NCBI RefSeq assembly: GCF_000143415.4
Contig: NW_003314269.1
Location: 148,401-212,400 of the forward strand
Length of the DNA: 64,000 nt
From: Selaginella moellendorffii
Taxonomy: Eukaryota > Plantae > Lycopodiophyta
Reading direction: 5' to 3'
The notes below the pieces were generated by a model. That model had not been told where the DNA came from. It did no database searches and saw nothing but the letters and a program-made list of their open reading frames with translations. Positions 1 through 37,083 of this stretch are shown here, piece by piece (within the stretch, counting starts at the first letter, position 1; the number at the start of each line of letters is the position of its first letter). The translations under genes and the position numbers were made by a program.

Positions 1-1596
1 CCTCTGCTTCTATGTTGTTCAGTCTATATGCACACACAAAAGTTTATCATGGAAAACTTTGGAGCAAAGAAAAGAATTGAACTACTTGCAAAAGATAATA
101 ATTGCTCGTGATGGCTGTGAGATGATGTTAACATAGAGATGGAGATCCTTCTTGCCTTGCTCCATTTTTACTTGTGATCCTTTTTTCTAACTCTCGCCTA
201 TAAGAACTACTCTCTTTGGTGAGGCCGCTGTCCCTGGGCATAGGTGGCAACGACACAAGAAAGATAAACACAATCGATAAGAAACAACTGTTTCTTAGGG
301 TGGAGCATATCTCCAACTTTATGCTTAGATTCTATTTTGCTTCAAACATTAATTCCTATCACCCTATATTTAAAAGATGCTTGAATATTCTAGGATATTT
401 AATGGTTGTGATTCATTTAGATTAATCTGTATTATAACTTATAAATATATTTATAATTTATAAGCTTTCCTAAAAACTTCTTAATTATTGTACCATCTTA
501 TGGATGGTATGCAATAAGATTAATCTTGTATTTATAAATTATAAACATGTTTATATTTATAAAATTTGGCCTCACAATTATGCACATTTTAGGCTTAAGA
601 TGAATTCTATAATTGATGCTCTAACACTCTAGTACTAAGAGTAAAGTTAGACCATAAACATTTACAATATAATTATTATAAATTTAAAAAGATGCATACA
701 TGGTTATATAGAAAATTCATTGTAGAGTATAATAAGGTCACTAGTCAATGCAAGTTTGAAACTCTCACCAAATCATTCTAATATATGACCATTATGGCCA
801 CAAATATGTGATGAATACTGATTTGGCTTCATATTGACTTCTCTTCTACTTGAATCACATATTGATCAATTAAATTAATAAATAATATAAACATGAATAA
901 CACTAATATTAATCACACTAAGTGATGCTATGTATAAGTTTTATAAAATTTAGATATTCAGTTACAAAAGCGGTAAACTTAGAAAATGGCTTAGCTTATT
1001 TTAGTATATTTTGTTTCAGCCTTAGTTTCTGTACACATAAATCAAGAATGTTCAGATATATTTTTGACACACTACATTCATAAATGTGATTGTCATTACA
1101 CACTGTTTAGAGGAAAGTGTTGATAGTGTATTGAGAGGATCTTCCACACATGCTATTGTGGATTCACATTTGGCTTCAGCAAGTGACTATTGTGGTTGTG
1201 AATCACATGCTAAGACAACCAAGAGGAGATGTTATTTGAAAAATAACAAAAGGAATTTTGTTATTTTATGTTGCATTTATATGTCCTCTCTAGCTGTGAA
1301 TAACAATTTTAAATTTTAGAATAACTTTTTTAATAAAGCCACACATATGGTAGAACAGAGTGGCTAACATATGTTAAGATCCACACATGCTAGCAAGTTC
1401 TTAATGCAAATACCAAACTAACTAGCAGACTCTCCTTATAAGTGATGTAGCTTCAACATTTCATCTAGCATATCAACTCTATTAGAGTATCTCATAAAAT
1501 CTTGATAAAAACCATTAAACATAAGTTGAATAATGGTTGTTAACAGTATTGTAAGATTCACAAACCAAAATGTTGCAACACTTTATAAATATGGGG

Positions 1597-1601
<5 letters not shown>

Positions 1602-1653
<52 letters not shown>

Positions 1654-1664
1654 GGGGGGGGGGG
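1602..1664. repeat. (AG)n microsatellite followed by a 14-nt G run
   Basis: Directly visible: AG repeat 1602-1649, G run 1651-1664. Confidence 0.95.
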
Positions 1665-1700
1665 AAGATCTTACACATAAATGTTAAAGAGATATTAGAT

Positions 1701-2001
1701 TGTAAGTAACCCAATATAGAGGGAAAAAGCTAAAAAATGAGAGTGCATATTTTTTTTCTAACCAGTTAAGGTTTTGAGGTATTTTGAGTTAAGTATCCTT
1801 GAGTTTGAATAGTATTAAAATAAATGACCTCTTGTCGGATTATAACCAATAAAAGAGAATGGTTTGATATAAAGAAAAAGGGCATATAAACAAGAATACA
1901 CCCACTTTTTCAATCGGTTTTAGTATTCTTAGGTTTGAGTAGTATTAAGTTTGAGTCTTAGGTTTAGTAACTTTTAAGAAAATTCAAATTCAAAGTTTAC
2001 A
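1701..2001 (+). mobile_element. Two decayed, tandem Cassandra-type LTR fragments
   Basis: Starts TGTAAG and ends TTTACA. Aligns by eye to the reverse complement of the LTRs at 19775-19968/20630-20823 (e.g. gttaagtatccttgagtttgaatagtatt vs gttaagcgtccttgggtttgaatagtact). Confidence 0.75.
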
Positions 2002-4838
2002 TGGAGAAGGGTGTTATTCCATTGTCTTAAATTCCAAGGGTTTATGAATCTTATTGTGACAAAGCTTAATAAAAGTATTCAATTTTACATTAATTATTGT
2101 TCATTAAATGATATATGTATCCCCAATATACCCTCTTCTTCATACTGTTAATCTTTTGGATTGTTTTGGGAAAAGCCATTAGTTCATCAAATAAAATTTG
2201 GTACTAGTAAATATTAAGAGTTGAGGAGGATGTTTCTCAGACTACTTTTTGTACACCATTTGATTTATATGAGTTTTTGGTGATGCTATTCGATTTAAAC
2301 AATACTTTAGCAACTTTTCAATGGATGATTGATGAGGTTTTTTTTTATATGCTAGAGGCAATTGTTGACTTTATTGATAATAACTTGATCCATTTAGAAG
2401 GGACATAGAAGAAGCATATCCATGTTAGATTGGCTATGGGAAACTAATTTAAAACTAAAGTATGTGTTTGGGAAATAATTTATCTTAGGTACCACATTTC
2501 TTGTGAGGGTTTACAAATTTATTTTGACAAATTTATGGCTGTTTTGAAGTTTGAAGTGTATGAATTATGTGTAGTACTTCTTTGGTAAGATGTAATATTT
2601 TAGTTATTTTATTGATCATCTTTCTAATTGTACTATATCATTGTAAGTGTTGTTGAAGTTATCAATATCATCTTTCATCTAACTTTAGTACTACAAGTGG
2701 GCATCTAAAAATTTTAAAGAAGTGTTGACGACTCTTTGTTAGCTTTTGAATTTGGACTTCTTAAAAGGTCATCCAATTTAATATAAGAATTTTAAAAAAG
2801 TGTTGACAAATTTTTGTAAACTTCTAAATTTGGACTTTCTAAGAGGTCATTCAACCTAGTATTATTCAAATATAATCTCAAATATCCCAAGACCTTTAAT
2901 CAATTGGAAAAAAGAGTACACTCTTTTTCATGGGCTCTTTCCCTTTATATTTGAATTTTTATGTATTGTCTTTCATGGTTGTTTACATTCTTTTTAATTA
3001 CACTTGATCTTTTATTTTGCGTTCAATATTGGTTTTGGAAGTGTGTTAATGAAAGAAAGCATGAGTGCACATAGTTAACATCATCCTATTATCTAACTAG
3101 CAAAGGTGAATTACTTCACAAAAAAGGAGTGTCTTGCAATAATTTAGAGTCTTAATAAGCTTAATGTATATTTGGATGGTTCTTAGACATTGTTGGAGGG
3201 TGATGATATTATAGTCATTTTATTATTAAAGCAAAAGAACCTAGTTAGATGTATTGCTCAGTGGGTTATAAAGCTTAAGATATATGATTTTGAGGTTGCT
3301 CATGTTCCTTGCGAGCCTATTATTATAACATTAAGAGATTTTTTAGATAAGGATTTTATGTTGTTAAGAGTTGTTGTGTTTGATATTTAGTGTCCAAAAA
3401 GTGTAAAACTAGATTTACCTAAGATTCATAAGGCTTAAAAAGTTGAGTCATAAACTCAAAGGCTTCATGATGAGTTTGAAAATTTTTCATCACTTACTAA
3501 TAATTTTTTATTTCAACATTTACATTCTCAATATTGCCTTAAGGATAATATTCTTTACTTTATAAGATTGATTTTGATAACCATTTACAGTTGGTGATGT
3601 TTTTTATCTTTATTTCACGCTTTCTTTATACTTATCATGACTTCTATTCTAAATGGGATATCATTGTATGAATGAGAAGTTGTATAGATATTTTTATTAA
3701 CAATATATACAATGTGATATTATTTGATATATGCATTGATGCTAAGTTCTTAATACTCCTTTTTGTGCTATAGAATGGTGGAGTCAATTATAATTTTCCA
3801 TTTTGTTTAAGTTAGTAGTATTTGATTTGATTGGGCCTCTTTTATGGTTGATTGTCAATAATGAGTTTATCATTATTGCTTCTGACTATTTAACTCATTA
3901 TATAGAAGTTAATACTCTTATTAGTATATTTATGACTATTGTTAAATATTTCCTCCTTAATTGAGTGGTGTTCTAGCATAGTGGAATTTCTCAAATAATG
4001 GTTATATATTTATAGTTTAGGTATTTCATGTTTTGATATCTTTATTGGGGATACACCACATTTTAATGAGTGTTTATCATCCATAGACAAATGGATTAGG
4101 ATGGTTATTTATTATTTCTCTAGTATATGGATGTTATGAGGATGTAGAGTTCCATAGATGCTTCACCATATAACCTCTTATATACTCATGATTTTATATT
4201 TCCAATGGAGTTAAATTTACCTTTATGATTGCTATGAGTTACCAATGAGATCAATATTTGACACATAATCTTCCACTAGTTTAAATGAAATTTTCTTAAC
4301 ACTTAGGCTATGTACAAGTGGAATAACAATGGCACTATAACTTTTACCATTGTTCATTTATAGAATGCAAAGTGAATAATTTAATGTTGGGTTTGTTTTT
4401 CCAATCTTATAGTGTGTGGTTTGTATAAAAGGCTCCTTGTCCAATAGAAGGGATTGTATCAAGTGTTGTAACAAATTGGATTACAAGTTTATAAGATTTA
4501 GTATATGAAGAAATCACTCTAAAGACATAATATTCAACAAACTAATTCTTAAGAAATTAAGCATATTAGCAGTTGAAGTGTTTCGTACAAATGGATTATA
4601 AATAATTTACACTATTTACAAATCTATTAGTGCCTCCTTCTGATATCAATAAGAGAGCATAACTTCCTTTTTTTATCCTTTGGAGAAGAGATGTTAAATA
4701 TATAGTTATGATACTGTATATTATTATTAACATAATGAGATTTTGATAGTTATTGAATTGATTTCAATTAGAATTACTTCCTCTTATATATCATTTAAGT
4801 TTTTGAATATATATATATTTGTATCTCATATACTCACA
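2002..4838 (+). mobile_element. Highly degenerate Ty3/Gypsy remnant (RT-RNaseH-integrase-3' LTR), same family as the 4840-21225 element
   Basis: Collinear with 17340-21225 (e.g. 2250 tacaccatttgatttatatgagttttt vs 17607 tacaccatttggtttgtatgagttctt). The decayed 3' LTR at ~4692-4838 ends CTCACA like the 5' LTR of the young copy. Confidence 0.85.
2815..2987 (-). mobile_element. Decayed Cassandra solo LTR inside the old Gypsy pol (partial duplicate at ~2737-2790)
   Basis: tgtaaacttctaaatttggactttctaagaggtca...ggttgtttaca is collinear with the LTR at 19775-19968. Confidence 0.8.
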
Positions 4839-5013: not shown

Positions 5014-7833
5014 TTGGTGGAGAAGAGGGACACCTTTGATTGTCCCTGAAGATTGTTTGGATTTGGAATTTTAGTTTAGATCTAGCTTTTGCATTGTCTA
5101 GATCTAACTTTTTCCATTTCCTTTCTTTTGTTCTTTCCCTTTAGGATTTTGGTTTATCTCTAGCTTTTTGCATTGTCTAGATCTCCATTTTCTTCTAGCT
5201 TTTGCCATTCCTCTTCTTTCACTTTTTCCTTTTCGTTCATCTTCATGGGAGATTAGCAATCTCCTCCTTTGATTCTGGAGCAGCAGTTGGTATAATTGCT
5301 TGACGCTATGCGTTTGAAATTGAACAATCAAACTCAATTGATGGCGACATTTATGGCATGTGGTACAACTCCTCCTATTCTTGGTGCCAATCCTTGCGTT
5401 CGGCTGGAGTTTTTTCGAGGGAATCTTGGGGATGATATGTACCATTGGTTCAATCACTTCACGGTGATTGCCACATATCATTCTTGGGATGATGCTCAAA
5501 GTTTGTGTGAGTTTCCCATGTATCTCTAAGGGACGGCGTTGCAATGGTACAATGGTTTGAGCATAGCCACTCGTGGGGATTAGAGTGTTCTCCTGGACAT
5601 CTTCAAATGCGCATTCGGACATGCTAATGATTGATGATGCCTTCCAACAATTACATTGTCTTCGCCAAGGGCTATCTGAGTCAGTGATGGAATTTGGTGT
5701 TCGTTTTTGACAAGCGGGGTAGCTTAGTGAAGTGTTCAAGAGCCGGCTCTAGTTCCTTCGGGAGGTCGACTGGCCGATGCTCCCAGTCCAAGTGTGGGTG
5801 GCACTACCTACTTGGATACCTGGTGTGGCTCAACGGAACCTCGCTCTAAGCCCATGGCTAGAGCACCCAAAGGCAGAAGGCGTGGAGAGTACCCACGAGG
5901 CCCGCGTAGGGCCACGGTGTTCCAAAAAGTTGCCCCAAAGTCCCAGACTGTGGAAAGGAAGAGCAACAGCCCTCTAGTGTGGTGACAAGGGATACAGCCA
6001 CATAGTAAGGAAGTCTTAGAGGACAGTTGGACTTAGTGGTCAGGCCTGTGGGCCTTGATCCAGTGGCAGTGTTGGTGAACACGGCCATGGACAGAAAGGG
6101 ACTTGGTGGGGACCAGAAAGGAGATATTGGGGAAGGCTATTTCCCATGTTTGCGGGCATCCTAAGGATGCTTAGGAGTGGATATGGGATGACCACTCATG
6201 GACGGATAGCCCAGTCTTGGAGAGACGGGATTGCAATGTAGGTGGTGTTGGACCACTGATGTGACCAAGGTGATTAGGCATGGCCTAGCGTAACGGGCTG
6301 GTATGTTGGTGGTGCCTTGGGGTGTATGTGGAGCACTTGGACCAAGTGCAAAAGTTGAGTGGCGTGGATGCCATTCGTGGGGTTAGCAAGCCCCAAGTTC
6401 TGAATGGGACTTATGGAGGTTGTGAATGAGACTCCTCCAAGTGGTCGAAGGTGCGGTTAAGTGACTAAAGTAGAATGGAAAAATTAGTCGCTTACATTAA
6501 CGATGTTCTTCACTTGGCACAACGTTATAAGACATCGCCTCTTCCACTTCTCGTTGCCCATCCTTTCGCTCCTCTTCCTGTAGGCGATGGTCCTATTCCA
6601 ATGGAGGTTGATGCTGCTGCTGCTTGAGTCCAAGGACAAGGGTGAGGATGTGGTCGTGGCCATGACGTTTGCTGTTGGGCATGTGATGAAGTTGGGCACA
6701 CTTATCAGCATTGTTGGCGTTTTTCGGATTAGCGACCTCCATTTCCTGGGTGGAGACCTTGGCGTCATTAACTTCCTATTGGTGCTACTGTAGTGGAAGG
6801 TCTAGAAACTATGATGCATATGGGAAACGAGGAGTCACGCGAGTAACAGAGGGACCTTGTGCGAATAAGTTAGTGACCCCTCCATCTTTCTTTTGGGAGT
6901 ATCATGAAGGGGTTCACTTGGCACCGGTTCATCCAGTGTTTACTTTCCAAGCTCATTTTTATAACAAGAGGTCTTCTATTATTTTCTCAGTGTTGGTTGA
7001 TACATATTTGAGTTTATCTTCTATTGCTCGACCTATTGCCATACGTTGCCATTTACATTTGCATTGTGCGGTGGAACTAGTTTTCATTCTTTATGGCAAC
7101 AGCTATACATATGCATGTGCACGGGATGAGGCAGACTTAGTTGTGCATGTGGGTAGTCTCGACCTTGAGTTGCAATCCTTGCGGGTGGTGCCGAGTCAAG
7201 TTTTTGACCTCATCCTTGGTATGGATTGGTTGCAATGCAATCATGCCAAGTGTGACTTTGAGGCTTCTCCCCCTTATCTCATACTTCTTTATATTTCATC
7301 CATTCCTTTTACTTTTGTACTTCTTTGTCCCTTTAAGCTCTATTTTGTTAAAGTGGGAATTGTCATTATCCCACTTGTAAAATAAGGTTTCCAATCCTTT
7401 ATATAGTATATAAATATAACAAAATTCAACTGCATTGAGGCACATGCCATTTTATTTTAAACAAGGAAATGTCTACTCAATCACTTCTCCTCCCCCTGCC
7501 ACTGCTTCACCTCTCTCTTCTCCTTGTCATCGTCGTCCAATTTCTTTCCATCCTTTTAATATTGGCTCAGTTGCTCCGAGTCTAGGTGGAGCCCAAGTCC
7601 CCATTCAATCTTTACTTTCCCCTTATTAATAAAACAACTTCGTAGACTTCCAATAACATGCTGTAACACGCTGTAACACTTCTAGTATAATGCAAATCCT
7701 CTCAAAGAATTGTCTTTTAATATTAATACAATGGCATGGAACCCCATGCCATAATAAGTTACATTTTTACATGGACATAATAAGTTACATGGACAATGTT
7801 AGAAATGGTAAAAGGTTAGGAATGGATGTACTA

Positions 7834-10800
7834 TTATTTACCTGATGGTTTGTCTTGTATGACCTTCCTCCGCTGCTCTTTGGCCACCTCAGGCTGGCCA
7901 TCGTCGTCATCATCGTCGTCGTCGTTATTGTGATCGTCACCATTGTGAGGACCATCCAAGTCCTCTTCGTCCTCCTCTTCTTCGTCCTCCTCTTCTTTGT
8001 CCTCCTCTTCATCCTTCTGCTCTTCCTGCTCATTATCTTTCTCTGGCTCCTCATCCCCCTCTTGCATTTCTTCCATAGGCTGCTCAGGCTGGATGGCTTG
8101 TTCTTCCAGGACCATCTTGGGAAAATCATCTGGCCGAGTCTCCATCTCAAAATACAAGACATCCATAGCCTGTTTTAGTGCGTGACCTAGGACCGTATCC
8201 TCACCCGATTGTCTTAACATGGTTTCTGCACGTTCTTGCACCCTTCGAAGACGATGAGATGAGAAAAACGTGGCCCTGACTTGAAAAGAATCCCTCATCC
8301 ATTGTACCTCTCCATTGAGATTGGGGAAGGGGAGTCCGCCATAGGAATCTGAGTCAGGAGGTGGTGACTGGCTGCTTTCACTCAGCCCTTGATGTGCAAT
8401 GAATGGCATGAGCACACACGCCATAACCGCGAGGCATTACCTATCATCTTTTCGTTGCCCTTCTTCCTTTTCGAATCAAACGCCTCTGATCCCGACGATT
8501 GTCCAACGTGCTTTCGCTTTTTATGACCACTGTCAATTTGAGCTTGATCTGCAAGAAATGGCATGAGGACCCACGCAATAACCATGACGCTTTACTTCCC
8601 GTCCTTGGAGGCTCTGTCGTGCCTTCCGCATCCTCAGGTGCCTGCTCCTCAATTCCCTTTCGCTTTCGTTTCTTATGCACCCGTTCTACAGAAATAGCAT
8701 GAGGACATACGCGATAAGCACACAAATGCTTTTACCCTTCCTCCTCTGCCCTGGTCGGTTGTCCATCTCTTTGTCTACAGCGTCTGAAAGCTGTTTTGCA
8801 GGTAGCCTAATTCGAAGTTCACGACATCTCCTTGGCACTTGAACTGTATATTATTGCATCAACACATGCAACATCCCATAATATTTTTAAGTTACCTTTC
8901 ATAAAGTTTTCCATTGGTTCAACTCGTTCCCCTGAAATACAAACTTAGATAAGTGCATGGGGCCATATGTCATGATCGTACCTATTTCGGAACTCTCCTT
9001 ATCACTCTCCGAAGCCTCCCCCTCCTCCACTGGAGGCACGTTGTTCCGTTCGATTTCCTCGACGCGATCTGCAAGAACATTAGTTAATTGCGTGGGGCCA
9101 CATGCCATCAAACCTTCAGGTTCTTGTCATGAGGTCTGCGCTGCTTGCCCTAGTCTCTTTGGAATTTGAGCTGCAAGAAGCAATGGCATAAGAATTCACG
9201 TATAACAAAAATGATTGGTACCTCTCGTCTGTTGTACTTGGCTGGTGCTTGCCTGTTTTGCCTTTGAAGAAGTGTCTCCTGCAAGGAATGGCATGAGACC
9301 ACACGCCATTGCAAATATAATTTGTACCTCCTTTTTTCCTATTGCTTGTCTGTTTGTCCTTCTTCGACGTGCCACTAGTGCGCTTTTCAGTCCTCGTGTC
9401 TGAATATTCACAACGATCTATAATCAAAATGGCGTGAGGCCTCACGTGACCTTACCTTGTGCAGGTTGTGAGCTCGGCCCAACATGGGTATCTTCAACAG
9501 TAGCTGTTAACGCCGTTTCAGTATCTGGGGGTGGCCACGCTCCTGCATACAGAGCTTGTGAGATAACATTTAAACTTAAAGTGCGTACTCACCAGGTTCG
9601 CAGAGAAGATACTGTTTTTCTTTGGCAACTGTAATTATATGTTCCATTGAAGTCACCTCTTCAATGGAGTTTGTCACCGCAACACACGGGACACCCTTGA
9701 GTAGTGCGGCTCGAAAGAATAGTCCGCCGCAGTTGTACTCGACAACGCATTTGCCCTTGGAGTCGGAAGCAGGTGACCCACCTGCTATTGCGTTGAAGAC
9801 TCAGCTGAGCATTTCCCATGCTGCACCTGGAGCTTTCTCTGGATTCGAAAGCTCCATAGCCGTCTTCAGTTCCTCAGGCACGGGTAAATTGACCTCCCTC
9901 AGATCAATTCGATCGGCCTTGTCGAACGAAGCTGGGAAGTCATTCCAGTCCCACTCTGCTGCAGGACCAATAACAAGGGCGAGTGTGAAGATGTGGACAT
10001 TCGTCAGTATCTTCTTTTTAGCCATTATCCCATGGATCTCCCGCATCTCCTTGCCTTTCAACCGAGCCTTCACCTCGTTCAAGGCCTTTCAGAAGTTGTG
10101 ATAGGATTCGGAGTCGTAGATCATATAGTGGACTGAAGATTCCACCTCCGCAAGTCCCACCATTAAGTCAATGATGGAGCTGACTTCGTCTGCATAAGTG
10201 ATCTCCTCGTTTGTGAAATCCATCACACAAAAGATGTTCTTGACCTGCTCATCTCTGCGGGAAACGATGCTCCTCCACCTTTGATCCTCATCCGAATTCA
10301 CGTATACCCGGTAAGGTTCTCGATAGGCCTCTACTGCGGGGTCGAGCTGTTTCTGAAGCCGGCGGTCGACATCCCTCTTAATGAAATTTGGATACTGATC
10401 CAACTTCTTAGCTTTACTTTTCGTGGCATCCCGCAGCAGATCGATGAACTTGGGGGCCCCCTTCACGTACTCGTCGATGTCTTCATTTGACAACTCCAAC
10501 TCTTCCATCATCTCTTGCATGGTGTCGATGCTCACCCTCTCCACGGCCATTTGCTCGAAGATCCAATCCTTCAATAGCGCACGAGCTCTCAGAGTCGTGC
10601 ACAAGTCCTCGTATGTCACAATATGGCCGGGAGTCATTTTGGTCTTGTTGAAGACTACCTCACCACGTAGAAGAGCATTAGCCACTGTCAGAAGGTCGTC
10701 GTCGTCTAGAAACCGCGAGAAACGCAAGGCGTTGAGCTTCAAATCATTGGGCTTCCGGCCGTCCTCCACACCCATTGAGTTTAGCAACTCCCCGTCATGG

Positions 10801-12410
10801 TACCTCCTCAGCACATCTACCCATTTGTCAAAAACAACTTTTGTCGCGAGTAGAATGTTATGGATGCTGAGTGTGTCATTGACCCCCAGTGTTTTCGAGA
10901 GAAGACTCGAGAATTCCTGCAATGGAAATGGCGTGAGGCCACATGTTATGCCACATGCAACGAGGCTTACCTGCCAAGCGCTAGTTGCTAGTGCACGTCC
11001 TTGTCCTGGTTTTTGTGGCTTCTTCAGTTGAACCCAGAGCTTCCATGTTTGTGCCAATATCTCGTGCAGACCCGATTTGTAGCACGTTTCTTGCTTGACA
11101 TTCTGCGCATGGGAGATGTATATGATAGATTGGAGGGGCGAGTTGCCTTTTATCAGGCAGACAACTCTTGTCTTGAAGACTTTCTTCACCTCCTCGCCCA
11201 CCATAATATCCACAACTATCTCTTGCATCGCCAAGCTAGAATGCTGCCCGGAGACGGCATAGAACCAGATGTTCTGATCGTCCAACACCTTCCTATTGAT
11301 CAAGTCTGGAAACCTCGTCTCGCCCTTCATTGTTCGGTAGTAGGGGATCACGTCTGCGATGTCGGGTGTTACTAGACTTGCCAGCATCTTCTGCTTCAGT
11401 TTCTCCACCCACTCATCAGATACTAGCCTGTGGTTGTATTTGCTTTGGATGTCGATGTGGCTCACGTCGATTGTATATACTTTGTTGGAATAGTAACAAG
11501 TACTATTATCTGCGACGATTTTTGCTGCCTCTTCTTGCTCTTTCTGCTCTTTGCGGCTCTTCTTTTTGGTGGGTGTAGTGTTCGAACCCGAGGCAATGGC
11601 ATCACCGAGTAGCTTCTTTTTTGGAGCAGGAGAGTCGGACGTCGGCTTGAGCTTGACCACCCTTTTCTGCTTCGGGGTAGTTTCCAGATCGACCCCCTTC
11701 CCCTTCGCTTCGCGAACTGGAGTCACTCTCAACGGCTCAATGTTGGAATATAGTTTTTGAACATCGCCGTAGGTGAGGTCCGTGGATTCCATGTGATCTT
11801 CATAGACCCGCAGCGTCTTTGAAATTGTGGGCCTCCTGGACAACCTCTCCCTAGCTCCCTCTAGGAATTCCTTATAGCCGCTGCCCCCTCCGGGAAGCCG
11901 CTAGGATGTGCAAGGTGGATCTTGAAGGCGGACGCTGTCTCTACCACAAGTGCCAGTCCATATTCTTGCATGGAACTGCATGGAGTGTCTGTCACTTGGA
12001 TGAGGATCCCCATGCATTCTTTTCTCCCACCATCTGTGTTGTACAGCCTCAGATCCTCGCCTTCCATCCCAAAAGTCCAACTGGTGAGCTCCTCCCCCTT
12101 CTCTGCATCCACATTGACAGTGGCTGGAAGAAGAACGCAATTCCTCGCCTGTTCAGAAATGCACAACAATTAGAGCTGACAGATGAAAAGCTAGCAGCTG
12201 GAAATAACGTGAGGCCACACGCCATTCACCACTGCATCAGATGTCTTGAGGCTGCATCCTAAGATGGCGTGAGGCTACACGCCATCTGTAACCGGACTGC
12301 ACTCGAGAGCCCAATCGGTGCATGCCAATGTTGCTACTGAATGGCATGTGGCCTCATGCCATTTTCTACTTGGCCTAAAAGACTTACCATTTGAAGCTGA
12401 ATGGAGGCAT
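7834..12410 (-). pseudogene. Transposon cargo gene, multi-exon: ParB/DGQHR-like domain + degenerate N4/N6-MTase-like domain + Lys-rich mini-exons + acidic tail
   Basis: ORF 10089-11843 continues in frame through two TGA codons (10089-91 and 9801-03, probably CGA>TGA) to ~9590. There is a frameshift near 11850. About 10 GT-AG introns of 45-56 nt lie between 8400 and 9600, plus one at 10917-10970. Start codon position is uncertain. Confidence 0.7.
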
Positions 12411-13051
12411 GACAATCGAGGCCGGACTCGCTGGCGAATGTGCACTGTGTGTGCAGCGGATCGTAGCAGCAAGGCTACTCTGCCACTTACAGCTGGAGAG
12501 TGGCGCTGAAATCTCCCAGAACGCCAAGTGGGCTGCGTGTGGGTGGCGGAGTGGGCGGCGGAGTTGGCGGAAAAGTTACAAACTGGGTGTGTCTTGAAGT
12601 GGACGCCGATGCACACGAGCGCGATGCGAGCGCGAGTGTGATGCAAGCGCGAGTGGACGCCGATGCACACGAGAAACCTATAGAGAAGGTAGATGAGCGC
12701 GAATGTGAGCGTGATCGCGACTGGGAGCGCGATGGGAGCGCGAGTATGAAGCAAAATGCAAAACCTAACCTCACACGCGCGAAATGTCACGACGGTTGGT
12801 AATCCCGCAACGTCATCATTCCTCGGACTTGGGCGCCACCATTAATTTCTGGATCGCCGCGCGCATGTATGCATGTGAAATCCAAAAGAAATCCGCAACG
12901 TCATCATTCCTCGGACTGCATGCACGCGAAATCCAAAAGAAAGATCATGATTGGGATATCATTTAATACCCTCGCTATATTTATACCATGCATGATTGGA
13001 TATTCCAAATCATCTTGTATTTCCAAAAATGCCAGATGTTCAGCTAAATAA

Positions 13052-14983
13052 AGAATGGTATACAATGTCTTTCTTGATGACCCTGCAAAGAAGCATCTCG
13101 ATCGGACACCACATGAGACCACACGAGCCTTACAATGTTTCAGGGGCATTTGCTATAGATCCGACCGTTATTTTGCTCCAAGATTCTACAGTTTGGTGTG
13201 CATTGACCTTTCCATCGACACTGCAAAGGGACATCACAATCAGATGCGGGATCACAAGAAACTAACTTCACTAACTCTGGTTTCACCAAGATCTACGTAA
13301 GGAGTTATGAAATGAAAGGACCCTCTCTATTGAAATGTGTTTATGGTCCTAGGGGCATTGTGACATATGAAAGGATTTTGCATCAAGTTCTGTATTTGCA
13401 TGTTTATCAAGTTACTGAATTGCTAAACCCTAAACCCTCCCTAAATATGTGGCAAATGCTGTGTGAAGAAAGATGCCCTTTTTGGGCAAATGCTGTAAGA
13501 GGTAGATGCCGAGCAGTTACACGGGGAATAATCTTGGCGCGGATCGCTGACATAGCATGGCAAAGTTCGAATCACTGACATGGCACAGCTGGATCGAGGC
13601 AAGGACATGATGTGACAAAGTTCAACGTCCGACAGCAAAGTCTAGAAGCTACTCAGTTTGAAATTTGTCAGAGGAATTATAAGATCTGGTTTGTCAGAGG
13701 ATTTGATGTGACGTTCAAGCGTGTGGGCTCATGCAATTTTGATCCCAAAAAATGCACCAAAAAATGCTCGGCGTCATCTGGCGTTATCTCTTAAATGGCG
13801 TGGGGCCACATGCCATTTTAAGGGGCACATAGGAGTATATTCCTAGAATATTCTAACACGCGCGAGATTTTTTTGAGTTTTCTGGAGATCCAACCGTTAG
13901 ATCGCAACTAGATTTTACAGAATGGTATACAATGTCTTTCTTGATGACTCTGCAAAGAAGCATCTCGATCGGACACCACATGAGACCACACGAGCCTTAC
14001 AATATTTCAGGGGCATTTGCCATAGATCCGACCGTTATTTTGCTCCAAGATTTTATAGTTTGGTGTGCATTGACCTTTCCATCAACACTACAAAGGGACA
14101 TCACAATCAGATGCGGGATCACAAGAAACTAACTTCACTAACTCTGGTTTCACCAAGATCTACGTAAGGAGTTATGAAATGAAAGAACCCTCTCTATTAA
14201 AATGTGTTTATGGTCCTAGGGGCATTGTGACATATCAAAGGATTTTGCATCAAGTTCTGTATTTGCATGTTTATCAAGCTATTGAATTGCTAAACCCTAA
14301 ACCCTAAACATGTGGCAAATGCTGCGTGAAGAAAGATGCCCTTTCTGGGCAAATGCTGTAAGAGGCAGATGCCGAGCAGATGTATCTCAGGCTAGCGAAG
14401 GGGAAAAACGAAAGCTAGCTATAAACATGACGGGATGCAAATAGATTACTAGGCTGGTCCTGCGAAAATCAGAAACCATAATTGAAAACATTGAAAATGC
14501 AAAAAGAAAGGTTTATAATATTTTTGAATTTTAAGCAACCAAAGGAATGTAAGTAGGGCATGTGTTTGTAAGTTTAAAAATGCCTCAACCACTTAAATTC
14601 CCAAGTAAATAAAGTTGTTTCTATTTTTGGTACAGGTAAACTTTATAGCGTGTGGGCTCATGCAATTTTGAACCCAAAAATGCACCAAAAAATGCTCAAC
14701 TAGCATTATTCTTTGAATGGCGTGTGGCCTTATATTGCCATAAATGGACGTACACACACAACATAATTATTCCTTTACACGGCGAATAATCTTGGCGCGG
14801 ATCGCTGACATGGCATGGCAAAGTTCGAATCACTAATATGGCACAGCTGGATCGAGGCAAGGACATGATGTGACAAAGTTCAACGTCCGACAGCAAAGTC
14901 TAGAAGCTACTCAGTTTGAAATTTGTCAGAGGAATCATAAGATCTAGTTTGTCAGAGGATTTGATGTGACGTTCAAGCGTGTG
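13052..14983 (+). repeat. Internal segmental duplications within the DNA transposon
   Basis: 13052-13516 matches 13919-14379; 13517-13723 matches 14775-14983; 13716-13800 resembles 14645-14720. This explains the duplicated short ORFs in the ORF track. Confidence 0.92.
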
Positions 14984-15493
14984 TTATTTTTGAATTCTCG
15001 AACTCATTCCTAGGTCTATCATTTTTGTGCGCCGTGTTCTTGGTTCCGCTGAGCGCAGTGAGTGCTGCTTGTGTAAGCGGCGTTGTGAGATGTGGTTTAT
15101 GCGTCTACGAGCGGTTGCGGCATTGCGAGCGCCATTGCGAGCGGCAGTTTATGCGAGTGGCAGTTTGTGCGAGCGGCGCTACGAGCAGTTGTGGTGGTGC
15201 GAGCGGCGCTACGGTACCACTAATGGTATGAGGGCTCATGCCATCTTAGGGCTTGCAAGTTCATCACTAGCATATTGCCAATAGTTTCTTTACCTGCCTG
15301 TAGCTGTGTGTTTATCAAGATGGCATGAGGCCTCATGCCAATTTTGTGAATGCGAAATTTCACGTGGGTGTCAATAGCATGTTTGAATAATGGCATGTGG
15401 CCTCATGCTATTGAGGTTGTTTAGTATGTTATGAATTAGGCCATTCTCTAATCATTTTTTGTATGGTCTTAACTTCTTTTCTGCACTTTCAGA

Positions 15494-16710
15494 ATGGCCT
15501 CCACAAGTGCGACGCATGTTCCCTCCGTGGATCTTAAGAACCGTGCTACATGGATTCAGGCAAAGGTGTTTCTAAACAACCTCGAGGGGGAGGTGGTAGC
15601 TGAGGGCTTAGCCACAGTTGTCAATCCAAGAGATGTGGTTGCTAATCAAGAATTGGGCTGGGATGATATTGGAGTTGCGATTTTAGAAGTTGTTGACACA
15701 GAAGAAAACAGTCTGACTATTGGAAGCATTGTGCGGTGGAAATTGAGGCACTTAGTGTTTGAGAATGTGAAGGATTCACAATCAAACACCACTACAACTG
15801 ATGACAGAACATCTCTTCATGGGAAAAGAAAGTACACCTTCCTAAAGCGCAGCCAAAGGGATTTGAGCAACAAACCGAAAAGGCAGAAAATGGCGATGGA
15901 GGTTCGAATGGTCTCGACAGTTGCTTGTTGCAAGAGGAGGTGCTGTCAACATGCTGATTGGGATGCTATTGAAGAGGAGAGAGCAAGATACAAGACATTG
16001 TCCTGGAAGGCAGCTCGCAATTTTGTGTATGAGGCATTACGGTCATCTGTTGATGCTTCAGAACATCAGGTGGGGGGCATGGTCTTCCAGAGGGGTTTGG
16101 TTTGCATGAAGGCATGGAGAATCATTTATGGAGTCCCTCAAACCACATTCTACAGAATCAAAACTGAGTTCGAAGAACAAAGGGTTCAACAGGCAGTCCA
16201 TAGGAACGACGGTACTCACAAAACCAGAGGTCATGTTGTATATGGAGAGGCAATCTTCAAGAGGTTTGTCGAGACATGTAGCGAGCAGCAACCACATAAA
16301 ACCCGCCTCTTGGAAGATGGAACTCGAGACACCCAACGAGTTCTCCCTTCCATGTATACCAAGGGGGCCATATTGGAAGATGTGAATCGGGAATTCCAGA
16401 GTAATGGCACAGGAAGTTGAGCCAATCTAGATTTAGTAGATTGTGGAGCAACAGGTTCAGGGATGTGAGTATAGGAAAGTACTCCAGCTTTTCAAAGTGT
16501 GACGAGTGCACTGCTATCAAAATGGCTTTGTCGAAGAATTCTTGCATCGCTCAAGAGCGAGAGACGTTGGTTAGAAGGTGGCTCGACCACAACATCGAGC
16601 AGAGAAGCTGCAGGACTACATATTATCATAACAAGTTCTCTCCATGGAGAGACCTGACTCTTACCTCTGCATCATCCACGACAAAATGGACTAGAAAAAG
16701 ACGTGCATTG
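15494..16710 (+). pseudogene. Truncated Sola2-like transposase with an N-terminal Tnp1/En-Spm-like domain
   Basis: Motifs CCKRRCC, VCMKAWRIIYGV, H.N.GTHK, LPSMYTK, then (frameshift) FSRLWSNRFRDVSIGKYSSFSKCDEC..H..Q..CR..YY, then (frameshift) YLCIIHDKMD*KKT, which resembles the Sola2 DGMDQxK first catalytic Asp motif. Coding similarity stops at ~16710. Confidence 0.7.
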
Positions 16711-19700
16711 AATAATATCTAAATGTTCTCACCATTAAGTTATATGTCTGGCTAATAGGAATGATGTTCATCTTGGAAAGCTCACCACACGCTCAATGAA
16801 CAAACAAATAGTGTGTGCGCGCATGCCATCGCTCTTCTTTAGCTTCAGATTCGGCTTGTTCACCTTGACAATGAGATTTATTATACAACCAGATGGACTC
16901 AGTCTGGACACAAAGTCACCGCGCTAGTCACCATGCCCCAGATATGTCTAGCCCCTGGACATAAAACATATAATTTCACGTCATTTTCAAATACTTGAAA
17001 ATTTGTACCTAGTCCCATTTTACTGAATAAATCCCACTTTAACGAAATAGAGCTTTTTTACTTTTACCTCTGCTTCCATTACTTTTGTCCCCCCACTATT
17101 TCCTCCTATATTTCCATCTTATTTTGCTCTTCCCTTTTTTGATCCCTTTGACAATTTTTGTGTTGCAGTGGTTGACTGGCTCATGAAAGAGTATTCTGAT
17201 CTCTTTGACTTTGACCTATTGTCTGGGGCCAAGATTACCACAAGTCATCCGATTCCAACTAGGGATGCTTGTCCAATCAAGGTTCTTGTTCATCGTCGAT
17301 CACCCAAAGAGATCAATATTTTATGTGTAAATGTCAAGGAGATGTTGGAGAAAGGTGTTATTCAAAAGTCGCAGAGTCTTTGGCCATGTGAACCTCATCT
17401 TGTGATGAAGCTTGATGGGAATATTCGTTTCTGCATCGACTATCATCCATTAAATGAAGTGATGATCCCGGATGTATACCCTCTTCCTCACACTGCTGAT
17501 CTTTTGGATCGTCAGAGGTGAAATCGTTAGTTCACCAAACTAAATCTTGCTTCTGGGTACTGGCAAGTACTGATGGCCAAAGAAGATATTCTTAAGACTG
17601 CTTTTCATACACCATTTGGTTTGTATGAGTTCTTGGTGATGCTGTTTAGTTTAAACAATGCTCCAGCAACTTTCTAATGAATGATGGATGGGGTTCTTTG
17701 CAATATATCGAAGATGACTATTGTTTGTGATATTTGTGATGTTTGTAATGTGTTGGATCGGCTACAAAATGTTGGTTTAAAGCTGAAGTGGTCAAAGTGC
17801 ATGTTTGGGTCCAAAGACTCAACTTATCTTGGGTATTGTATTTTTTGTGAGGGTTTGCAAATTGATCCTGACAAACTTGTGGCTATTCTAAAGTTCCCTA
17901 CTTTGAAGTGTGTGAATGATGTGCAACACTTCTTGGGCAAGGTGTAGTATCTCGGTTGTTTTGTGGATCATCTTTTTTATCGCACTGTATCATTGCGAGC
18001 GTTACTGAAGTCATTAACGTCATCTTTCATCTGGTCTCTGGATTGTGAGCTGGCATTCGTGGATCTCAAAGAGCTATTGATGACTCCTCCAGTTTTGGTA
18101 TATCCTAACTACACTCGACTTTTTATTTTGTGCGTGGATGCTTCTGACATTGGTCTTGGAGGAGTGTTGATGCAAGAAAGCTTGAGTGTGCTTAGTCAGC
18201 ATCATCCTATTGTGTATATAAGCCGTACATTATAACCAGCGGAGATGAACTACTCCATGATAGAGAACGAGTGTTTAGCAGTAGTTGAGAAACTTCATGA
18301 GAAACTTCATGCATATTTACATGGTTCTTGAACGTTACTTGAAGGTGACCATGCTACCATTACTTCATTATTGAAGTGGAAGAACCTAGTTGGTCGTACT
18401 GCTCGGTGGGCTTTGAAGTTTTAGATATATGATTTTGATGTTGTTCATCACTTAGGGAGTTCTATGGCTGATGTTGATGCCTTTTCTCGAGCTCCTCTTT
18501 CTTCTCCACTCTCTTCTCATGTTTCTGGCGAGCCTGTTGTTTTAGCATCTGTGGATTTTCTAGACGAGGATTCTATGTTGTCGACAGTTGCTATACTTGA
18601 TATTCAGTGTCCACAAGGCGCAAAGCAAGATCTACCTTCTCTTGATGGGGTTCGCGAGGCTCAAAAGCTTGAGCCGTGTATTCAAAGGCTTCGAGGGGGG
18701 TTTGAGAATCCTAGATCACTTGCTGATGACTTGCCTTTTCAGCATTTACATTCTCAATATTGCCTTGAAGATGGCCTTCTTTATTTTGTGGAGATGGATC
18801 CTGATGATCATTTATGGCTGGTGGTGCCTTCTGTCTTTATTCCATGGTTTCTCCATGCCTACTATGATTCTCCTGTTCTAGGTGGGCACATGGGACATTG
18901 TCGTGTAACTGAGAAGCTGCGCAAGTCTTTCTATTGGCTGGAGATGCGACATGATGTTATCTGGTATGTCCATAGCTGCGTTTGGTGCCAAGTTCATAAT
19001 ACTCCCCCTCGTGCCGCGGAAGGACGGTTTGGAGTCAATTGCATCCCATCTGTTTGAGTTAGTGGCGTTTGATCTTATGGGACCTTTTCCACGGTCGACT
19101 GTTGGCAATGAGTATGTTATTATTGCTTCTGACTACTTGACTCGTTGGGTGGAAGTTGGTGCTCTTACTAGTGCCTTTGCAACTGTTGTTGGATACTTCC
19201 TCTTCAATTAAGTGGTGTTTCAGCATTCTTGTCTAGTGTGGATTCTTTCGGATAATGGTCTCGCATTTATGGCTGAGGCATTTCATGTTTTGACATCTCA
19301 CTTAGGGATACGCCACACTTTCATGAGTGCTTATCATCCACAATCAGATGGTCTAGTGGAATGGCTCGTTTGGACATTTAAAGGGATGATTGCGAAGTAT
19401 GTGAGCTTTCAGCATTCGGATTGGGATGGTTATTTGCCATCTTTTTGGTATGCATATATCACAAGGGTGCAGAGTTCTGTTGGTGCTTCACCATATAAAC
19501 TCCTATATGGTCAACCAACGGAGCTAGGTTTACCTTCGCAATTGCTACAAGCTGCTAATGATAAGTTGTGGGATCAGTATTTGATGAGCATTCTTCCACT
19601 TGTCTGAGTAAAGTCTGCTGAACACTTAAGCCGTGTACAAGTGGGACAACAATAGTGCTACAACTCCCATCATCGTCCACCTGCGAAATACAAAGTGGAT

Positions 19701-37054: not shown

Positions 37055-37083
37055 TTGAGGTTGGGGGAGAAGAGTTTACTCTG

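What the first reader, a model, noticed from the sequence alone, without database searches (positions are those of the whole stretch)
7335..17055. Candidate new system: Sola2-like transposon carrying a ParB-like/MTase-like gene and its own array of palindromic sites
Seen in sequence: one TIR-bounded unit holds a transposase (+), a divergent multi-exon cargo gene (-) with ParB-like and MTase-like segments, and >20 copies of one 22-bp palindrome confined to the element. Established: bacterial ParB proteins load at short dispersed palindromes (parS), ParB-N/N4-N6-MTase fusions occur in phages, and plant VANDAL elements encode VANC proteins that bind motifs accumulated in their own non-coding DNA to counter silencing. 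Inference: this may be a self-recognition module (protein plus cognate sites) for anti-silencing, transpososome assembly or inheritance of the element. This copy is decayed (stops, frameshifts, truncated transposase).
Basis: partly seen in the sequence, partly recalled or inferred. Interest (0 to 1): 0.92.

Follow-up and report, generated by a model that had tools for sequence, protein, structure and literature searches.

The report
Dead transposon with palindrome-bearing introns
A decayed 9.7-kb DNA transposon in the clubmoss Selaginella carries about 21 copies of one 24-bp palindrome, found only in its non-coding parts and in nearly every intron of a large unknown accessory gene; this looks like a transposon that marks itself with binding sites for its own protein, an idea already proposed for algal and Arabidopsis transposons.

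Summary
A 9,721-bp unit with 27-bp terminal inverted repeats interrupts a Ty3/gypsy pol gene. It holds 21 copies of a 24-bp palindrome; the other 54 kb of the window hold none.

New here: the minus-strand cargo gene has 12 exons and 11 GT-AG mini-introns of 38-54 nt. Spliced, it gives a 1,156-codon frame broken by three TGA stops. Ten of the 11 introns carry one palindrome copy and the exons carry none. The remaining copies lie in the 5' leaders, the divergent intergenic region and both subterminal regions. The spacer asymmetry of the palindrome flips with the direction of transcription.

The ParB-like and MTase-like labels rest on motif patterns only. No profile, PDB or fold search supports them, and the catalytic DPPY motif is absent. 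The Sola2 label could not be tested. The plus-strand ORF has no homologue and is truncated.

The cargo family is almost absent from databases: 8 weak hits among 1.8 billion proteins. One distant homologue has a different palindrome in the intron at the same position.

The idea is not new. ParB-type accessory genes with inverted-repeat arrays are described in algal Sola1 and Plavaka elements, and VANC binding motifs lie in VANDAL introns. Verdict: a new variant of a known kind, with the mechanism inferred only.

The parts
7335..7361 (.). Left terminal inverted repeat
   Evidence: 27 nt, 93% complementary to 17029-17055 (I3); sequence read.
17029..17055 (.). Right terminal inverted repeat
   Evidence: I3.
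7331..7334 (.). Possible target-site duplication, left copy (CTTT). The right copy is 17056-17059 (TTTT).
   Evidence: Read. Only 3 of 4 bases match, so the length and identity of the duplication are unresolved.
7834..11843 (-). Accessory ('cargo') gene, 12 exons: 11843-10971, 10916-9593, 9542-9456, 9417-9328, 9278-9222, 9170-9114, 9068-8982, 8931-8896, 8843-8736, 8685-8596, 8548-8441, 8387-7834.
   Evidence: Removing 11 GT-AG segments gives 3,471 nt in one frame: 1,156 codons, 3 internal TGA stops and a terminal TAA. The unspliced frames of the 3' part hold 20-40 stops, and shuffles of the spliced part give about 31.
11864..12169 (-). Probable upstream coding exon (N-terminal region of the cargo protein), in a different frame from the main exon
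   Evidence: 102-aa ORF. Weak local resemblance to the N-terminal part of homologue P0007 (E 0.018); hhalign does not support it. The link to the main exon needs a frameshift.
10977..11510 (-). Region with a ParB/Srx-like sequence pattern, including the motif SGQHS (DGQHT in P0007, SGQHS in P0003)
   Evidence: Alignment A3. The only database echoes are sub-threshold and concern P0007 alone: Pfam DUF6551 at E 0.13 and PHROG 1033 'ParB-like partition protein' at E 0.19, both on the DGQH stretch. The AF2 model has mean pLDDT 38.
9593..10300 (-). C-terminal region with a methyltransferase-like pattern in beta-class order: 'VMDFTN' where DPPY would lie, and 'VVEYNCGG' where motif I would lie
   Evidence: and alignment A2. 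The Selaginella paralogue P0002 shares the motif-I-like stretch (tblastn E 1e-4). No Pfam or NCBIfam hit even at E up to 10.
10917..10970 (-). Intron 1 (54 nt) with palindrome copy 10927-10950; its position is shared with distant homologues
   Evidence: GTAAGC...TTGCAG. P0003 and P0007 both end 'WKV*', which is read-through of the donor at this point, and L003 shows a 103-nt intron there.
9543..9592 (-). Intron 2 (50 nt), the only one without a recognisable palindrome
9418..9455 (-). Intron 3 (38 nt) with palindrome 9428-9451
9279..9327 (-). Intron 4 (49 nt) with palindrome 9287-9310
9171..9221 (-). Intron 5 (51 nt) with a degenerate palindrome at 9182-9205
   Evidence: The copy scores below the weight-matrix threshold.
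9069..9113 (-). Intron 6 (45 nt) with palindrome 9086-9109
8932..8981 (-). Intron 7 (50 nt) with palindrome 8951-8974
8844..8895 (-). Intron 8 (52 nt) with a degenerate palindrome (GTTGCATGTGTTGATGCAAT)
8686..8735 (-). Intron 9 (50 nt) with palindrome 8693-8716
8549..8595 (-). Intron 10 (47 nt) with palindrome 8557-8580
8388..8440 (-). Intron 11 (53 nt) with palindrome 8402-8425
12203..12363 (.). Cluster of three palindromes (12203, 12263, 12340) just upstream of the first recognisable cargo exon
   Evidence: The spacer orientation switches between 12263 and 12340.
13715..14739 (.). Intergenic palindromes (13715, 13794, 14644, 14716) inside an internal segmental duplication
   Evidence: The duplicated blocks are 13049-13348 / 13916-14215 and 13517-13725 / 14775-14983, each 97% identical (D2, D3).
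15222..15412 (.). Cluster of three palindromes (15222, 15319, 15389), ending 82 nt upstream of the ATG at 15494
7428..7753 (.). Left subterminal palindromes (7428 degenerate; 7730)
16807..16830 (.). Right subterminal palindrome (degenerate)
   Evidence: 19.5 bits.
15494..16722 (+). Remnant of the second gene (presumed transposase): a 308-aa ORF at 15494-16420, a frame-shifted 101-aa ORF at 16417-16722, then 'DSYLCIIHDKMD' in a third frame (within 16632-16691). The rest is deleted.
   Evidence: No Pfam hit, no PDB hit and no homologue. Calling it a transposase is inference from its position and Cys-rich pattern.
6711..7334 (+). Left flank: Ty3/gypsy pol, protease part
   Evidence: RVP_2, E 4.9e-4.
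17963..19057 (+). Right flank: the same retroelement pol, RNase H and integrase parts
   Evidence: RT_RNaseH_2 at E 1.6e-16 and Integrase_H2C2 at E 7.6e-13.

Best explanation
Shown:
- The feature is a dead, internally deleted copy of a two-gene cut-and-paste DNA transposon (9,721 bp, 27-bp TIRs). It is inserted in a Ty3/gypsy pol gene of Selaginella moellendorffii.
- One gene is a 12-exon accessory gene for a protein of about 1,156 aa. Its parts, in order, are a Lys-rich linker, a domain with a ParB/Srx-like motif pattern, a helical domain, a degenerate methyltransferase-like region, and a long basic then acidic tail.
- About 21 copies of a 24-bp inverted repeat (half-site AATGGCGTG, 6-nt spacer) occupy only non-coding sequence. 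They lie in 10 of the gene's 11 mini-introns, in the leaders upstream of both genes, in the divergent intergenic region, and once near each end.

Inferred:
- The palindromes are cis-acting sites for a dimeric DNA-binding protein encoded by the element, most likely the accessory protein.
- A high density of sites lets that protein coat or mark its own element. The purpose would be to control its transcription or counter host silencing, as VANC proteins do on VANDAL21.
- Because the sites must not disrupt coding sequence, they were packed into every intron. Tandem duplication of short exon-intron modules in the disordered tail may have added more.
- The first spacer base avoids A on the transcribed sense strand. 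This removes a GTGAGG splice-donor mimic, which would explain why the orientation of the motif follows the direction of transcription.
- After silencing, CpG decay degraded the sites (CG to TG or CA in the half-sites).
- All three premature stops are TGA. That is compatible with such decay, but I did not test it.
For: - Sites are confined to the element: 21 of 21 matrix hits are inside it, and shuffles give 0.06. There are none in 48 kb of other Selaginella DNA. There are only 3 single hits among 241 million metagenome records.
- Sites are excluded from 3.5 kb of exons but present in 10 of 11 introns.
- Clusters of three sites lie just upstream of each gene.
- Only one degenerate copy lies within about 250 bp of each end, unlike transposase-binding subterminal repeats.
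- Intron 1 is at an old, conserved position. So at least that palindrome entered an existing intron rather than creating it.
- A distant homologue locus (L001) carries a different perfect palindrome in the intron at the same position, and a related half-motif in its upstream leader.
- The spacer asymmetry flips at about 12300 with the direction of transcription. Fisher exact p is about 0.0014, by my arithmetic.
- CpG observed/expected is 0.73 and TG+CA 1.24 in the element, against 0.86 and 1.05 in the rest of the window.
- Precedents: VANC21 motifs lie in the VANC21 and VANB21 introns and upstream of VANA21 (PMC5735166). Plavaka PAG3 (ParB-like) lies beside inverted-repeat arrays (bioRxiv 10.1101/2025.02.11.637652). 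A ParB-MTase accessory gene sits opposite the transposase in Sola1-1_Ec32 (PMC12477816).
Against: - No binding data exist.
- No search identifies the accessory protein as DNA-binding. ParB-likeness rests on a motif in which the usual Arg is Ser or Thr, plus two sub-threshold hits.
- Only this one dead copy could be examined, so co-occurrence of protein, sites and second gene across a family is untested.
- The second homologue locus with an intron (L003) shows no palindrome.
- The Selaginella paralogue P0002 has no palindromes around it.
- The L001 palindrome lies 10 nt from a contig end and could be connected with assembly breakage.
Confidence: 0.45

Rival explanations
1. The palindromes are binding sites for the transposase, not the accessory protein. 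They serve transposition (transpososome assembly, end recognition or end pairing) or autoregulation of the transposase promoter.
For: Three copies end 82 nt upstream of the ATG of the plus-strand ORF, and one copy lies near each end. That ORF has Cys-rich and helix-turn-helix-like stretches. Many DNA transposons carry multiple internal transposase-binding repeats; this is my background knowledge of En/Spm, Ac and P elements.
Against: Most copies are deep inside the element and inside the other gene's introns. The TIRs share no sequence with the palindrome. The two subterminal copies are among the most degenerate (16-19 bits).
Confidence: 0.2
2. The palindromes act at the RNA level. As hairpins in the mini-introns and leaders they would control splicing of the element's own transcripts, or they would feed or attract small RNAs. 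A 24-nt self-complementary RNA matches the length of plant heterochromatic siRNAs.
For: Ten of 11 introns carry one copy at their centre. The 3' arm holds CTCAY, a branch-point-like sequence, 10-25 nt from the acceptor. The orientation of the spacer follows transcription.
Against: Among mismatched stem positions in the sense orientation, G:U (12) is no commoner than A/C (10), so nothing suggests that RNA pairing is preserved. At least 9 copies lie in the 3.3-kb intergenic region or near the ends, where no intron can be shown. The commonest form has a T-T mismatch next to the loop, which does not favour a hairpin.
Confidence: 0.12
3. The palindrome is a tiny selfish insertion (a micro-MITE or introner-like unit, or a product of hairpin-prone repair). 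It spread inside this element and was tolerated only where it could be spliced out or was non-coding. It has no function for the element.
For: The copies have unrelated flanks. Each intron holds exactly one copy, which fills half the intron.
Against: The splice sites are not part of the repeated unit: the donor-to-palindrome distance varies from 4 to 24 nt, with unrelated sequence. No duplicated target is visible. No copy occurs in the other 54 kb of the window or in 48 kb of other Selaginella DNA. Intron 1 predates the palindrome.
Confidence: 0.1

Closest known systems
VANDAL21 / VANC21 anti-silencing system of Arabidopsis (PMC5735166, PMC10398659)
   Same: A DNA transposon encodes an accessory protein. 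A short motif is highly enriched in the element's own non-coding DNA, rare elsewhere, and located in the introns of the accessory genes and upstream of the transposase gene. In VANDAL the exon-intron structure of the accessory gene is shaped by repeat formation.
   Different: VANDAL is a Mutator-type element. The VANC motif is a 9-nt non-palindromic sequence arrayed in tandem in one orientation. Here the site is a 24-bp inverted repeat, dispersed one per intron. No sequence relation to VANC was detected or tested. Binding and demethylation are shown for VANC and not here.
ParB-like plus DNA-methyltransferase accessory gene of the brown-alga transposon Sola1-1_Ec32 (PMC12477816)
   Same: A large DNA transposon has an accessory gene on the strand opposite the transposase. 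The protein is of similar size (1,104 aa against about 1,156). It was proposed to bind and epigenetically modify its own element.
   Different: In Ectocarpus the ParB and methyltransferase domains are recognisable; here no profile detects either, and the catalytic motif IV is absent. A full HMMER search of 1.8 billion proteins returned 8 weak hits; none of the 7 checked has a ParB or methyltransferase Pfam domain. Superfamily Sola1 against unassigned here. No site array is reported for the Ectocarpus element.
Plavaka accessory gene PAG3 of red algae (bioRxiv 10.1101/2025.02.11.637652; Curr Biol 2025)
   Same: An accessory protein with an N-terminal ParB-like domain, with arrays of inverted repeats in the same transposon. 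The authors suggested it binds its own element.
   Different: PAG3 carries a 2OG-oxygenase domain. Its repeats are tandem arrays adjacent to the gene, not one copy per intron. The transposon superfamily is different (Plavaka/CACTA-like).
Bacterial ParB-parS and DndB/DGQHR-type ParB-fold proteins
   Same: A palindromic site of 16-24 bp read by a dimer. The motif (S/D)GQH(S/T) resembles DGQHR, preceded by a pattern like 'I.V..I ... R ... P..ADV.P' (alignment A3).
   Different: No significant sequence or structure match. The motif Arg is replaced. No CTP-binding motif (GERRxR) was seen. The setting is eukaryotic, nuclear and intron-containing.
Sola2 transposons (Bao et al. 2009; PMC3627910)
   Same: TIR-bounded, possibly with a 4-bp T-rich target duplication. 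Sola2 elements are known to carry unrelated passenger genes such as Fanzor.
   Different: The transposase relation could not be shown. The catalytic domain is deleted here. The termini differ from the Dictyostelium Sola2 ends listed in PMC3627910 Additional file 11.

Membership tests
Sola2 superfamily of DNA transposons | Transposase homologous to the Sola2 DDD transposases | not testable with these tools
   No Pfam model exists for Sola catalytic domains (PMC5751038). The ORF 15494-16722 has no hit in Pfam, PDB or the protein collection. Nearly all of the catalytic region is deleted.
Sola2 superfamily of DNA transposons | 4-bp AT-rich target-site duplication | tested here: inconclusive
   The flanks are CTTT and TTTT, matching at 3 of 4 bases. 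No second copy of the host retroelement was available to recover the empty site.
ParB/Srx-fold N-terminal domain (ParBc, DndB/DGQHR, DUF262 and relatives) | Significant match to a family profile or a solved structure | tested here: not met
   No hit at E up to 0.1 in Pfam, NCBIfam, PADLOC or PHROGs for the window domain or for P0003. P0007 alone gives DUF6551 at E 0.13 and PHROG 1033 'ParB-like' at E 0.19. A profile search against PDB gave nothing relevant.
ParB/Srx-fold N-terminal domain (ParBc, DndB/DGQHR, DUF262 and relatives) | DGxHR-type motif after a beta-strand, with an upstream conserved Arg and Pro | tested here: inconclusive
   The pattern is present and conserved in three homologues (A3), but the motif Arg is Ser or Thr.
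ParB/Srx-fold N-terminal domain (ParBc, DndB/DGQHR, DUF262 and relatives) | ParB/Srx three-dimensional fold | tested here: inconclusive
   The AF2 models of this region have block pLDDT mostly below 50 in the full-length model and mean pLDDT 38 in the domain model. Foldseek on the full model gave no hit with E below 0.1.
Beta-class N6/N4 DNA methyltransferase (Pfam N6_N4_Mtase) | Catalytic motif IV (D/S)PP(Y/F/W) | tested here: not met
   The corresponding position reads DFTN in the window, DATT in P0006 and DSAN in P0001 (alignment A2).
Beta-class N6/N4 DNA methyltransferase (Pfam N6_N4_Mtase) | Profile match, and motif I FxGxG near the C-terminus | tested here: not met
   No Pfam or NCBIfam hit at E up to 10 for the window pieces, P0002 or P0006. 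Only a motif-I-like 'VEYNCGG' / 'VEYGCGG' is shared with P0002.
Algal transposon accessory proteins of ParB type (Sola1-1_Ec32 gene; Plavaka PAG3) | Accessory gene inside a large DNA transposon, divergent from the transposase, with inverted-repeat sites in the same element | tested here: met
   The sites are dispersed here rather than in tandem.
Algal transposon accessory proteins of ParB type (Sola1-1_Ec32 gene; Plavaka PAG3) | Sequence homology to those proteins | tested here: inconclusive
   A full HMMER search of 1.84 billion representatives gave 8 weak hits (best E 8e-7). None of the 7 scanned against Pfam has a ParB or methyltransferase domain. The algal proteins themselves were not available for a direct comparison.
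VANC-type sequence-specific anti-silencing (VANDAL) | Motif accumulated in the element's non-coding DNA, including accessory-gene introns and the region upstream of the transposase, and rare elsewhere | tested here: met
   compared with PMC5735166.
VANC-type sequence-specific anti-silencing (VANDAL) | Protein binds the motif and causes loss of DNA methylation | not testable with these tools
   This needs an intact protein, EMSA or ChIP, and methylome data.
Introner / MITE-derived introns | A repeated unit that includes the splice sites or has its own TIRs plus target duplication, and is spread through many host genes | tested here: not met
   The donor and acceptor lie at variable distances in unrelated sequence. 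No copy was found outside the element in 54 kb plus 48 kb. The genome-wide test was not possible.

The most novel reading that the evidence does not exclude
A family of eukaryotic transposon accessory proteins, so far absent from domain databases, recognises palindromes that its elements plant in nearly every intron of the accessory gene itself and in both promoters. The result would be a self-marking (anti-silencing or self-regulating) module. Under this reading the palindrome sequence co-varies with the protein between lineages: a GC-rich 29-nt palindrome in the equivalent intron of a distant homologue, and the 24-nt one here. The module would date back to early vascular plants and beyond.
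Probability: 0.3. Interest if true: 0.8.

Novelty: new variant of a known kind. Interest (0 to 1): 0.6.

Why it matters
Transposons that carry both a DNA-binding accessory protein and its cognate sites are the best candidates for sequence-specific escape from host silencing. Only VANC/VANDAL is proven. The algal ParB-type cases are recent proposals.

This element would extend the idea to a lycophyte and to a protein family that no profile recognises. It also shows an extreme layout, with one site in almost every mini-intron and an orientation that tracks transcription. That layout gives a clear, testable prediction about how coding and site density are reconciled.

The protein-site pair, if it binds, could also serve as an orthogonal targeting tool. 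The value is limited by the copy being dead and by the lack of any intact relative found here.

Tried and rejected
Searches and tests that gave nothing:
- Word-indexed homology searches with the 584-aa ORF, with alignment A2 and with the plus-strand ORF: no hits.
- The full HMMER search gave only 8 weak hits. Two of them (P0004, P0005) are repetitive and were set aside.
- Pfam, NCBIfam, PADLOC and PHROGs at E up to 10 on domain pieces: nothing significant.
- PDB sequence and profile searches: nothing.
- AlphaFold2 of the 584-aa ORF (mean pLDDT 48.6; only the helical part, aa 320-500, is confident) and of the N-domain (mean pLDDT 38). Foldseek against PDB gave no hit below E 0.1. I did not search with the second model because it is too poor.
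- The search for related loci with A2 failed for lack of conserved columns. With A3 in metagenomes, 494 pattern hits were found and none was confirmed.
- The palindrome in metagenomes gave 3 single hits, about the number expected by chance by my estimate.
- A domain shared between the N-termini of the two proteins: one BLASTP match ('LGWDDIGV' against 'LGWKDIGV', E 0.004), not supported by hhalign. Dropped.
- RNA-hairpin conservation test: no bias.
- Exact look-ups of the element's ORFs with 7 alternative starts: none in the collection.
- Walking along the scaffold to the other haplotype to recover an empty site: stopped. The genes at the locus edge are all multi-exon, and look-up needs exact products.
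- Recovering the pre-insertion sequence from another copy of the host retroelement: no such copy was held.
- The Sola2 transposase alignment in the supplement of PMC3627910 is unreadable as stored. Bao et al. 2009 is not held.

Full report
**Host and setting**

The window ORF 61425-62822(-) is identical to a protein annotated on scaffold GL377573.1 of assembly GCA_000143415.2. From my knowledge of that accession, this is Selaginella moellendorffii. The neighbouring genes listed for that scaffold (DUF569, B_lectin, the TAF2-DnaJ gene) match the window's ORFs.

The element lies inside a Ty3/gypsy pol gene. A retroviral protease match is on the left flank. RNase H and integrase matches are on the right flank, on the same strand. 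The TIR-bounded unit is therefore a true insertion.

**Observation check**

The 27-nt terminal inverted repeats are at 7335-7361 and 17029-17055 and are 93% complementary. The unit is 9,721 bp long. The flanking tetranucleotides are CTTT and TTTT, so a 4-bp T-rich duplication is possible but not proven.

The palindrome family is real:
- The degenerate 22-mer gives 15 hits against 0.01 expected, all inside the element.
- A 24-nt weight matrix gives 21 hits, all between 7428 and 16830. There are none in the other 54 kb, and 0.06 in shuffles of the element.
- There are none in 48 kb of other Selaginella DNA.
- Only three single matches occur among 241 million metagenome records, roughly the number I estimate by chance for a 38-bit pattern.

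The motif is best written as two half-sites AATGGCRTG around a spacer NGGCCN. The R/Y positions are CG alternating with TG or CA, as expected from decay of methylated CpG. The element's CpG observed/expected is 0.73 with a TG+CA excess of 1.24, against 0.86 and 1.05 for the rest of the window.

**The cargo gene**

On the minus strand a single frame runs from about 12068 to about 9600 with two in-frame stops. The palindrome at 10927-10950 lies in a canonical 54-nt intron (GTAAGC...TTGCAG, 10970-10917). Removing it aligns the protein with its paralogue P0002.

Applying the same logic downstream gives 11 GT-AG mini-introns of 38-54 nt. Splicing them yields a 3,471-nt frame of 1,156 codons. Its only internal stops are three TGA codons, at 10089-91, 9801-03 and 9127-29. 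By contrast, the unspliced 3' part has 20-40 stops per frame, and shuffles of the spliced part average 31.

Shifting the introns by up to 30 nt while keeping their lengths often still gives few stops. What is firmly shown is therefore that about 50 nt must be removed at these places. The exact borders rest on the GT-AG consensus.

Ten of the 11 introns contain one palindrome copy: eight matrix hits and two degenerate copies. The 3.5 kb of exons contain none. A further ORF at 11864-12169 probably encodes the N-terminal region but is out of frame with the main exon. The true start of the gene was not resolved.

**What the cargo protein is**

There is no Pfam hit, no PDB hit and no word-indexed homologue. 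A full HMMER scan of 1.84 billion representatives gave eight weak hits, the best at E 8e-7.
- Six of these are credible and cover two parts of the protein. P0003 and P0007 cover the N-terminal half. P0001, P0002, P0006 and P0008 cover the helical middle and the C-terminal part (alignment A2).
- P0007 and P0006 are two halves of one gene, separated by a 103-nt intron at exactly the position of the window's intron 1. P0003 ends at the same point. The family is therefore eukaryotic, with an old shared intron.
- P0002 is a 5'-truncated paralogue among ordinary genes on another Selaginella scaffold. It has no palindromes or TIRs around it.

The N-domain shows a pattern reminiscent of ParB/Srx-fold proteins, with a conserved (S/D)GQH(S/T) motif (A3). 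The only database echoes are two sub-threshold hits on that motif in P0007: Pfam DUF6551 at E 0.13 and a PHROG annotated as ParB-like at E 0.19.

The C-terminal region has the order and spacing of a beta-class N6/N4 methyltransferase. However, DFTN, DATT or DSAN stand in place of DPPY, and there is only a partial motif I. No profile detects it.

Both AlphaFold models are of low confidence outside a helical domain, and the fold search was uninformative. The two labels remain leads, not findings. If the region is methyltransferase-derived, it has probably lost catalysis.

**The second gene**

The plus-strand ORF (15494-16420) starts directly after a 3' splice-site-like sequence. It is followed by a frame-shifted 101-aa ORF with a 'KCDEC' motif, then by 'DSYLCIIHDKMD' in a third frame. 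After that only about 350 bp remain before the TIR. It has no homologue or family hit.

Sola catalytic domains have no Pfam model (PMC5751038), so the lack of a hit neither supports nor refutes 'Sola2'. The termini do not resemble the Dictyostelium Sola2 ends.

**Distribution and polarity of the sites**

Besides the ten intronic copies:
- three lie at 12203-12363, just upstream of the first cargo exon;
- three lie at 15222-15412, ending 82 nt upstream of the ATG at 15494;
- four lie in an internally duplicated part of the 3.3-kb intergenic region;
- 7428 (degenerate) and 7730 lie in the left subterminal region, and 16807 (degenerate) near the right end.

The spacer is asymmetric. The first spacer base is T on the minus strand in 8 of the 10 copies between 8402 and 12286, and never T on the plus strand there. 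From 12340 rightwards it is T on the plus strand in 6 of 9 copies and on the minus strand in one. Fisher exact p is about 0.0014 by my arithmetic.

The effect is that the splice-donor-like GTGAGG is removed from the sense strand of each transcription unit. I take this as a splicing constraint laid over a DNA-level symmetric site. Descent from oriented progenitor copies is an alternative. There is no sign that RNA pairing is preserved: G:U 12 against A/C 10 in the sense strand.

**A hint of co-variation**

In L001, the locus of P0003, the intron at the conserved position carries a perfect 14+1+14-nt palindrome of quite different sequence (G7-TCGAGAC and its complement). The leader upstream of the gene carries a related half-motif. 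The contig ends 10 nt after the palindrome, so a link with assembly breakage at a repeat cannot be excluded. L003 shows no such palindrome.

**Interpretation**

The layout has four features: sites only in non-coding DNA, dense sites at both 5' regions, one site in almost every intron of the accessory gene, and few, degenerate sites at the ends. This fits cis-sites for an element-encoded dimeric DNA-binding protein that marks or regulates the element.

It is the layout described for VANC21 motifs in VANDAL21, which lie in the introns of VANC21 and VANB21 and upstream of VANA21, at high density and rarely elsewhere (PMC5735166). It is also close to what has been proposed for ParB-type accessory genes of algal Plavaka and Sola1 elements.

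Transposase binding, an RNA-level role and a selfish micro-insertion remain possible. The report sections weigh them.

**Novelty**

The concept has published precedents, so this is not a categorically new system. What is new:
- the host lineage (a lycophyte);
- a protein family unknown to domain databases;
- the one-palindrome-per-mini-intron architecture, with transcription-linked polarity.

Everything rests on one dead copy. The family-level test could not be run with the tools at hand.

Noticed in passing
window 10089-10091, 9801-9803, 9127-9129: All three premature stops in the spliced cargo frame are TGA. This is the codon produced from CGA by deamination of methylated CpG, or from TGG by G-to-A change. 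It fits decay after silencing.
   Followed up: partly
L001 1567-1595 and 1-40: The locus of the distant cargo homologue P0003 has a perfect 29-nt GC-rich palindrome in the intron at the conserved position. A related half-motif lies in the upstream leader. Both ends of the 1.6-kb contig fall at or next to these motifs.
   Followed up: partly
L003 1590-1700: P0007 and P0006, found as separate proteins, are two parts of one gene split by a 103-nt intron at the same position as intron 1 of the window's cargo gene.
   Followed up: yes
L002 10001-11425 (Selaginella scaffold GL377575.1): P0002 is an annotated 451-aa paralogue of the cargo protein. It lacks the N-terminal domain and sits among ordinary genes (ArfGap, VQ), without TIRs or palindromes. 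It may be a domesticated or fossil fragment.
   Followed up: partly
window 13049-14983: The intergenic region of the element contains a rearranged internal duplication: 13049-13348 / 13916-14215 and 13517-13725 / 14775-14983, each 97% identical, and 13439-13516 / 14302-14379 at 95%. The duplication also copied two of the palindromes.
   Followed up: no
window 8375-8451 and 8530-8606: Two neighbouring intron-plus-exon-edge modules of the cargo tail are 73% identical over 77 nt. This suggests that palindrome-bearing introns multiplied by local duplication of exon-intron modules.
   Followed up: no
window 15653-15922 versus P0007 aa 142-224: The N-terminal part of the plus-strand ORF shares 'LGW(D/K)DIGV' and neighbouring residues with the N-terminal region of a cargo homologue (BLASTP E 0.004). 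hhalign does not support a shared domain.
   Followed up: yes
window 35438-38556: A PIF/Harbinger-type transposase ORF (DDE_Tnp_4, E 9e-34) lies next to an oppositely oriented ORF with a SAM domain, in the GC-richest part of the window (GC 0.62).
   Followed up: no
window 26632-29873: A lipoxygenase gene (PLAT and Lipoxygenase domains) in several exons; an ordinary host gene.
   Followed up: no
window 1-4000 and 54001-56000: Strongly AT-rich stretches (GC 0.27-0.31). CpG observed/expected is 0.38 in the first 8 kb, probably old methylated repeats.
   Followed up: no
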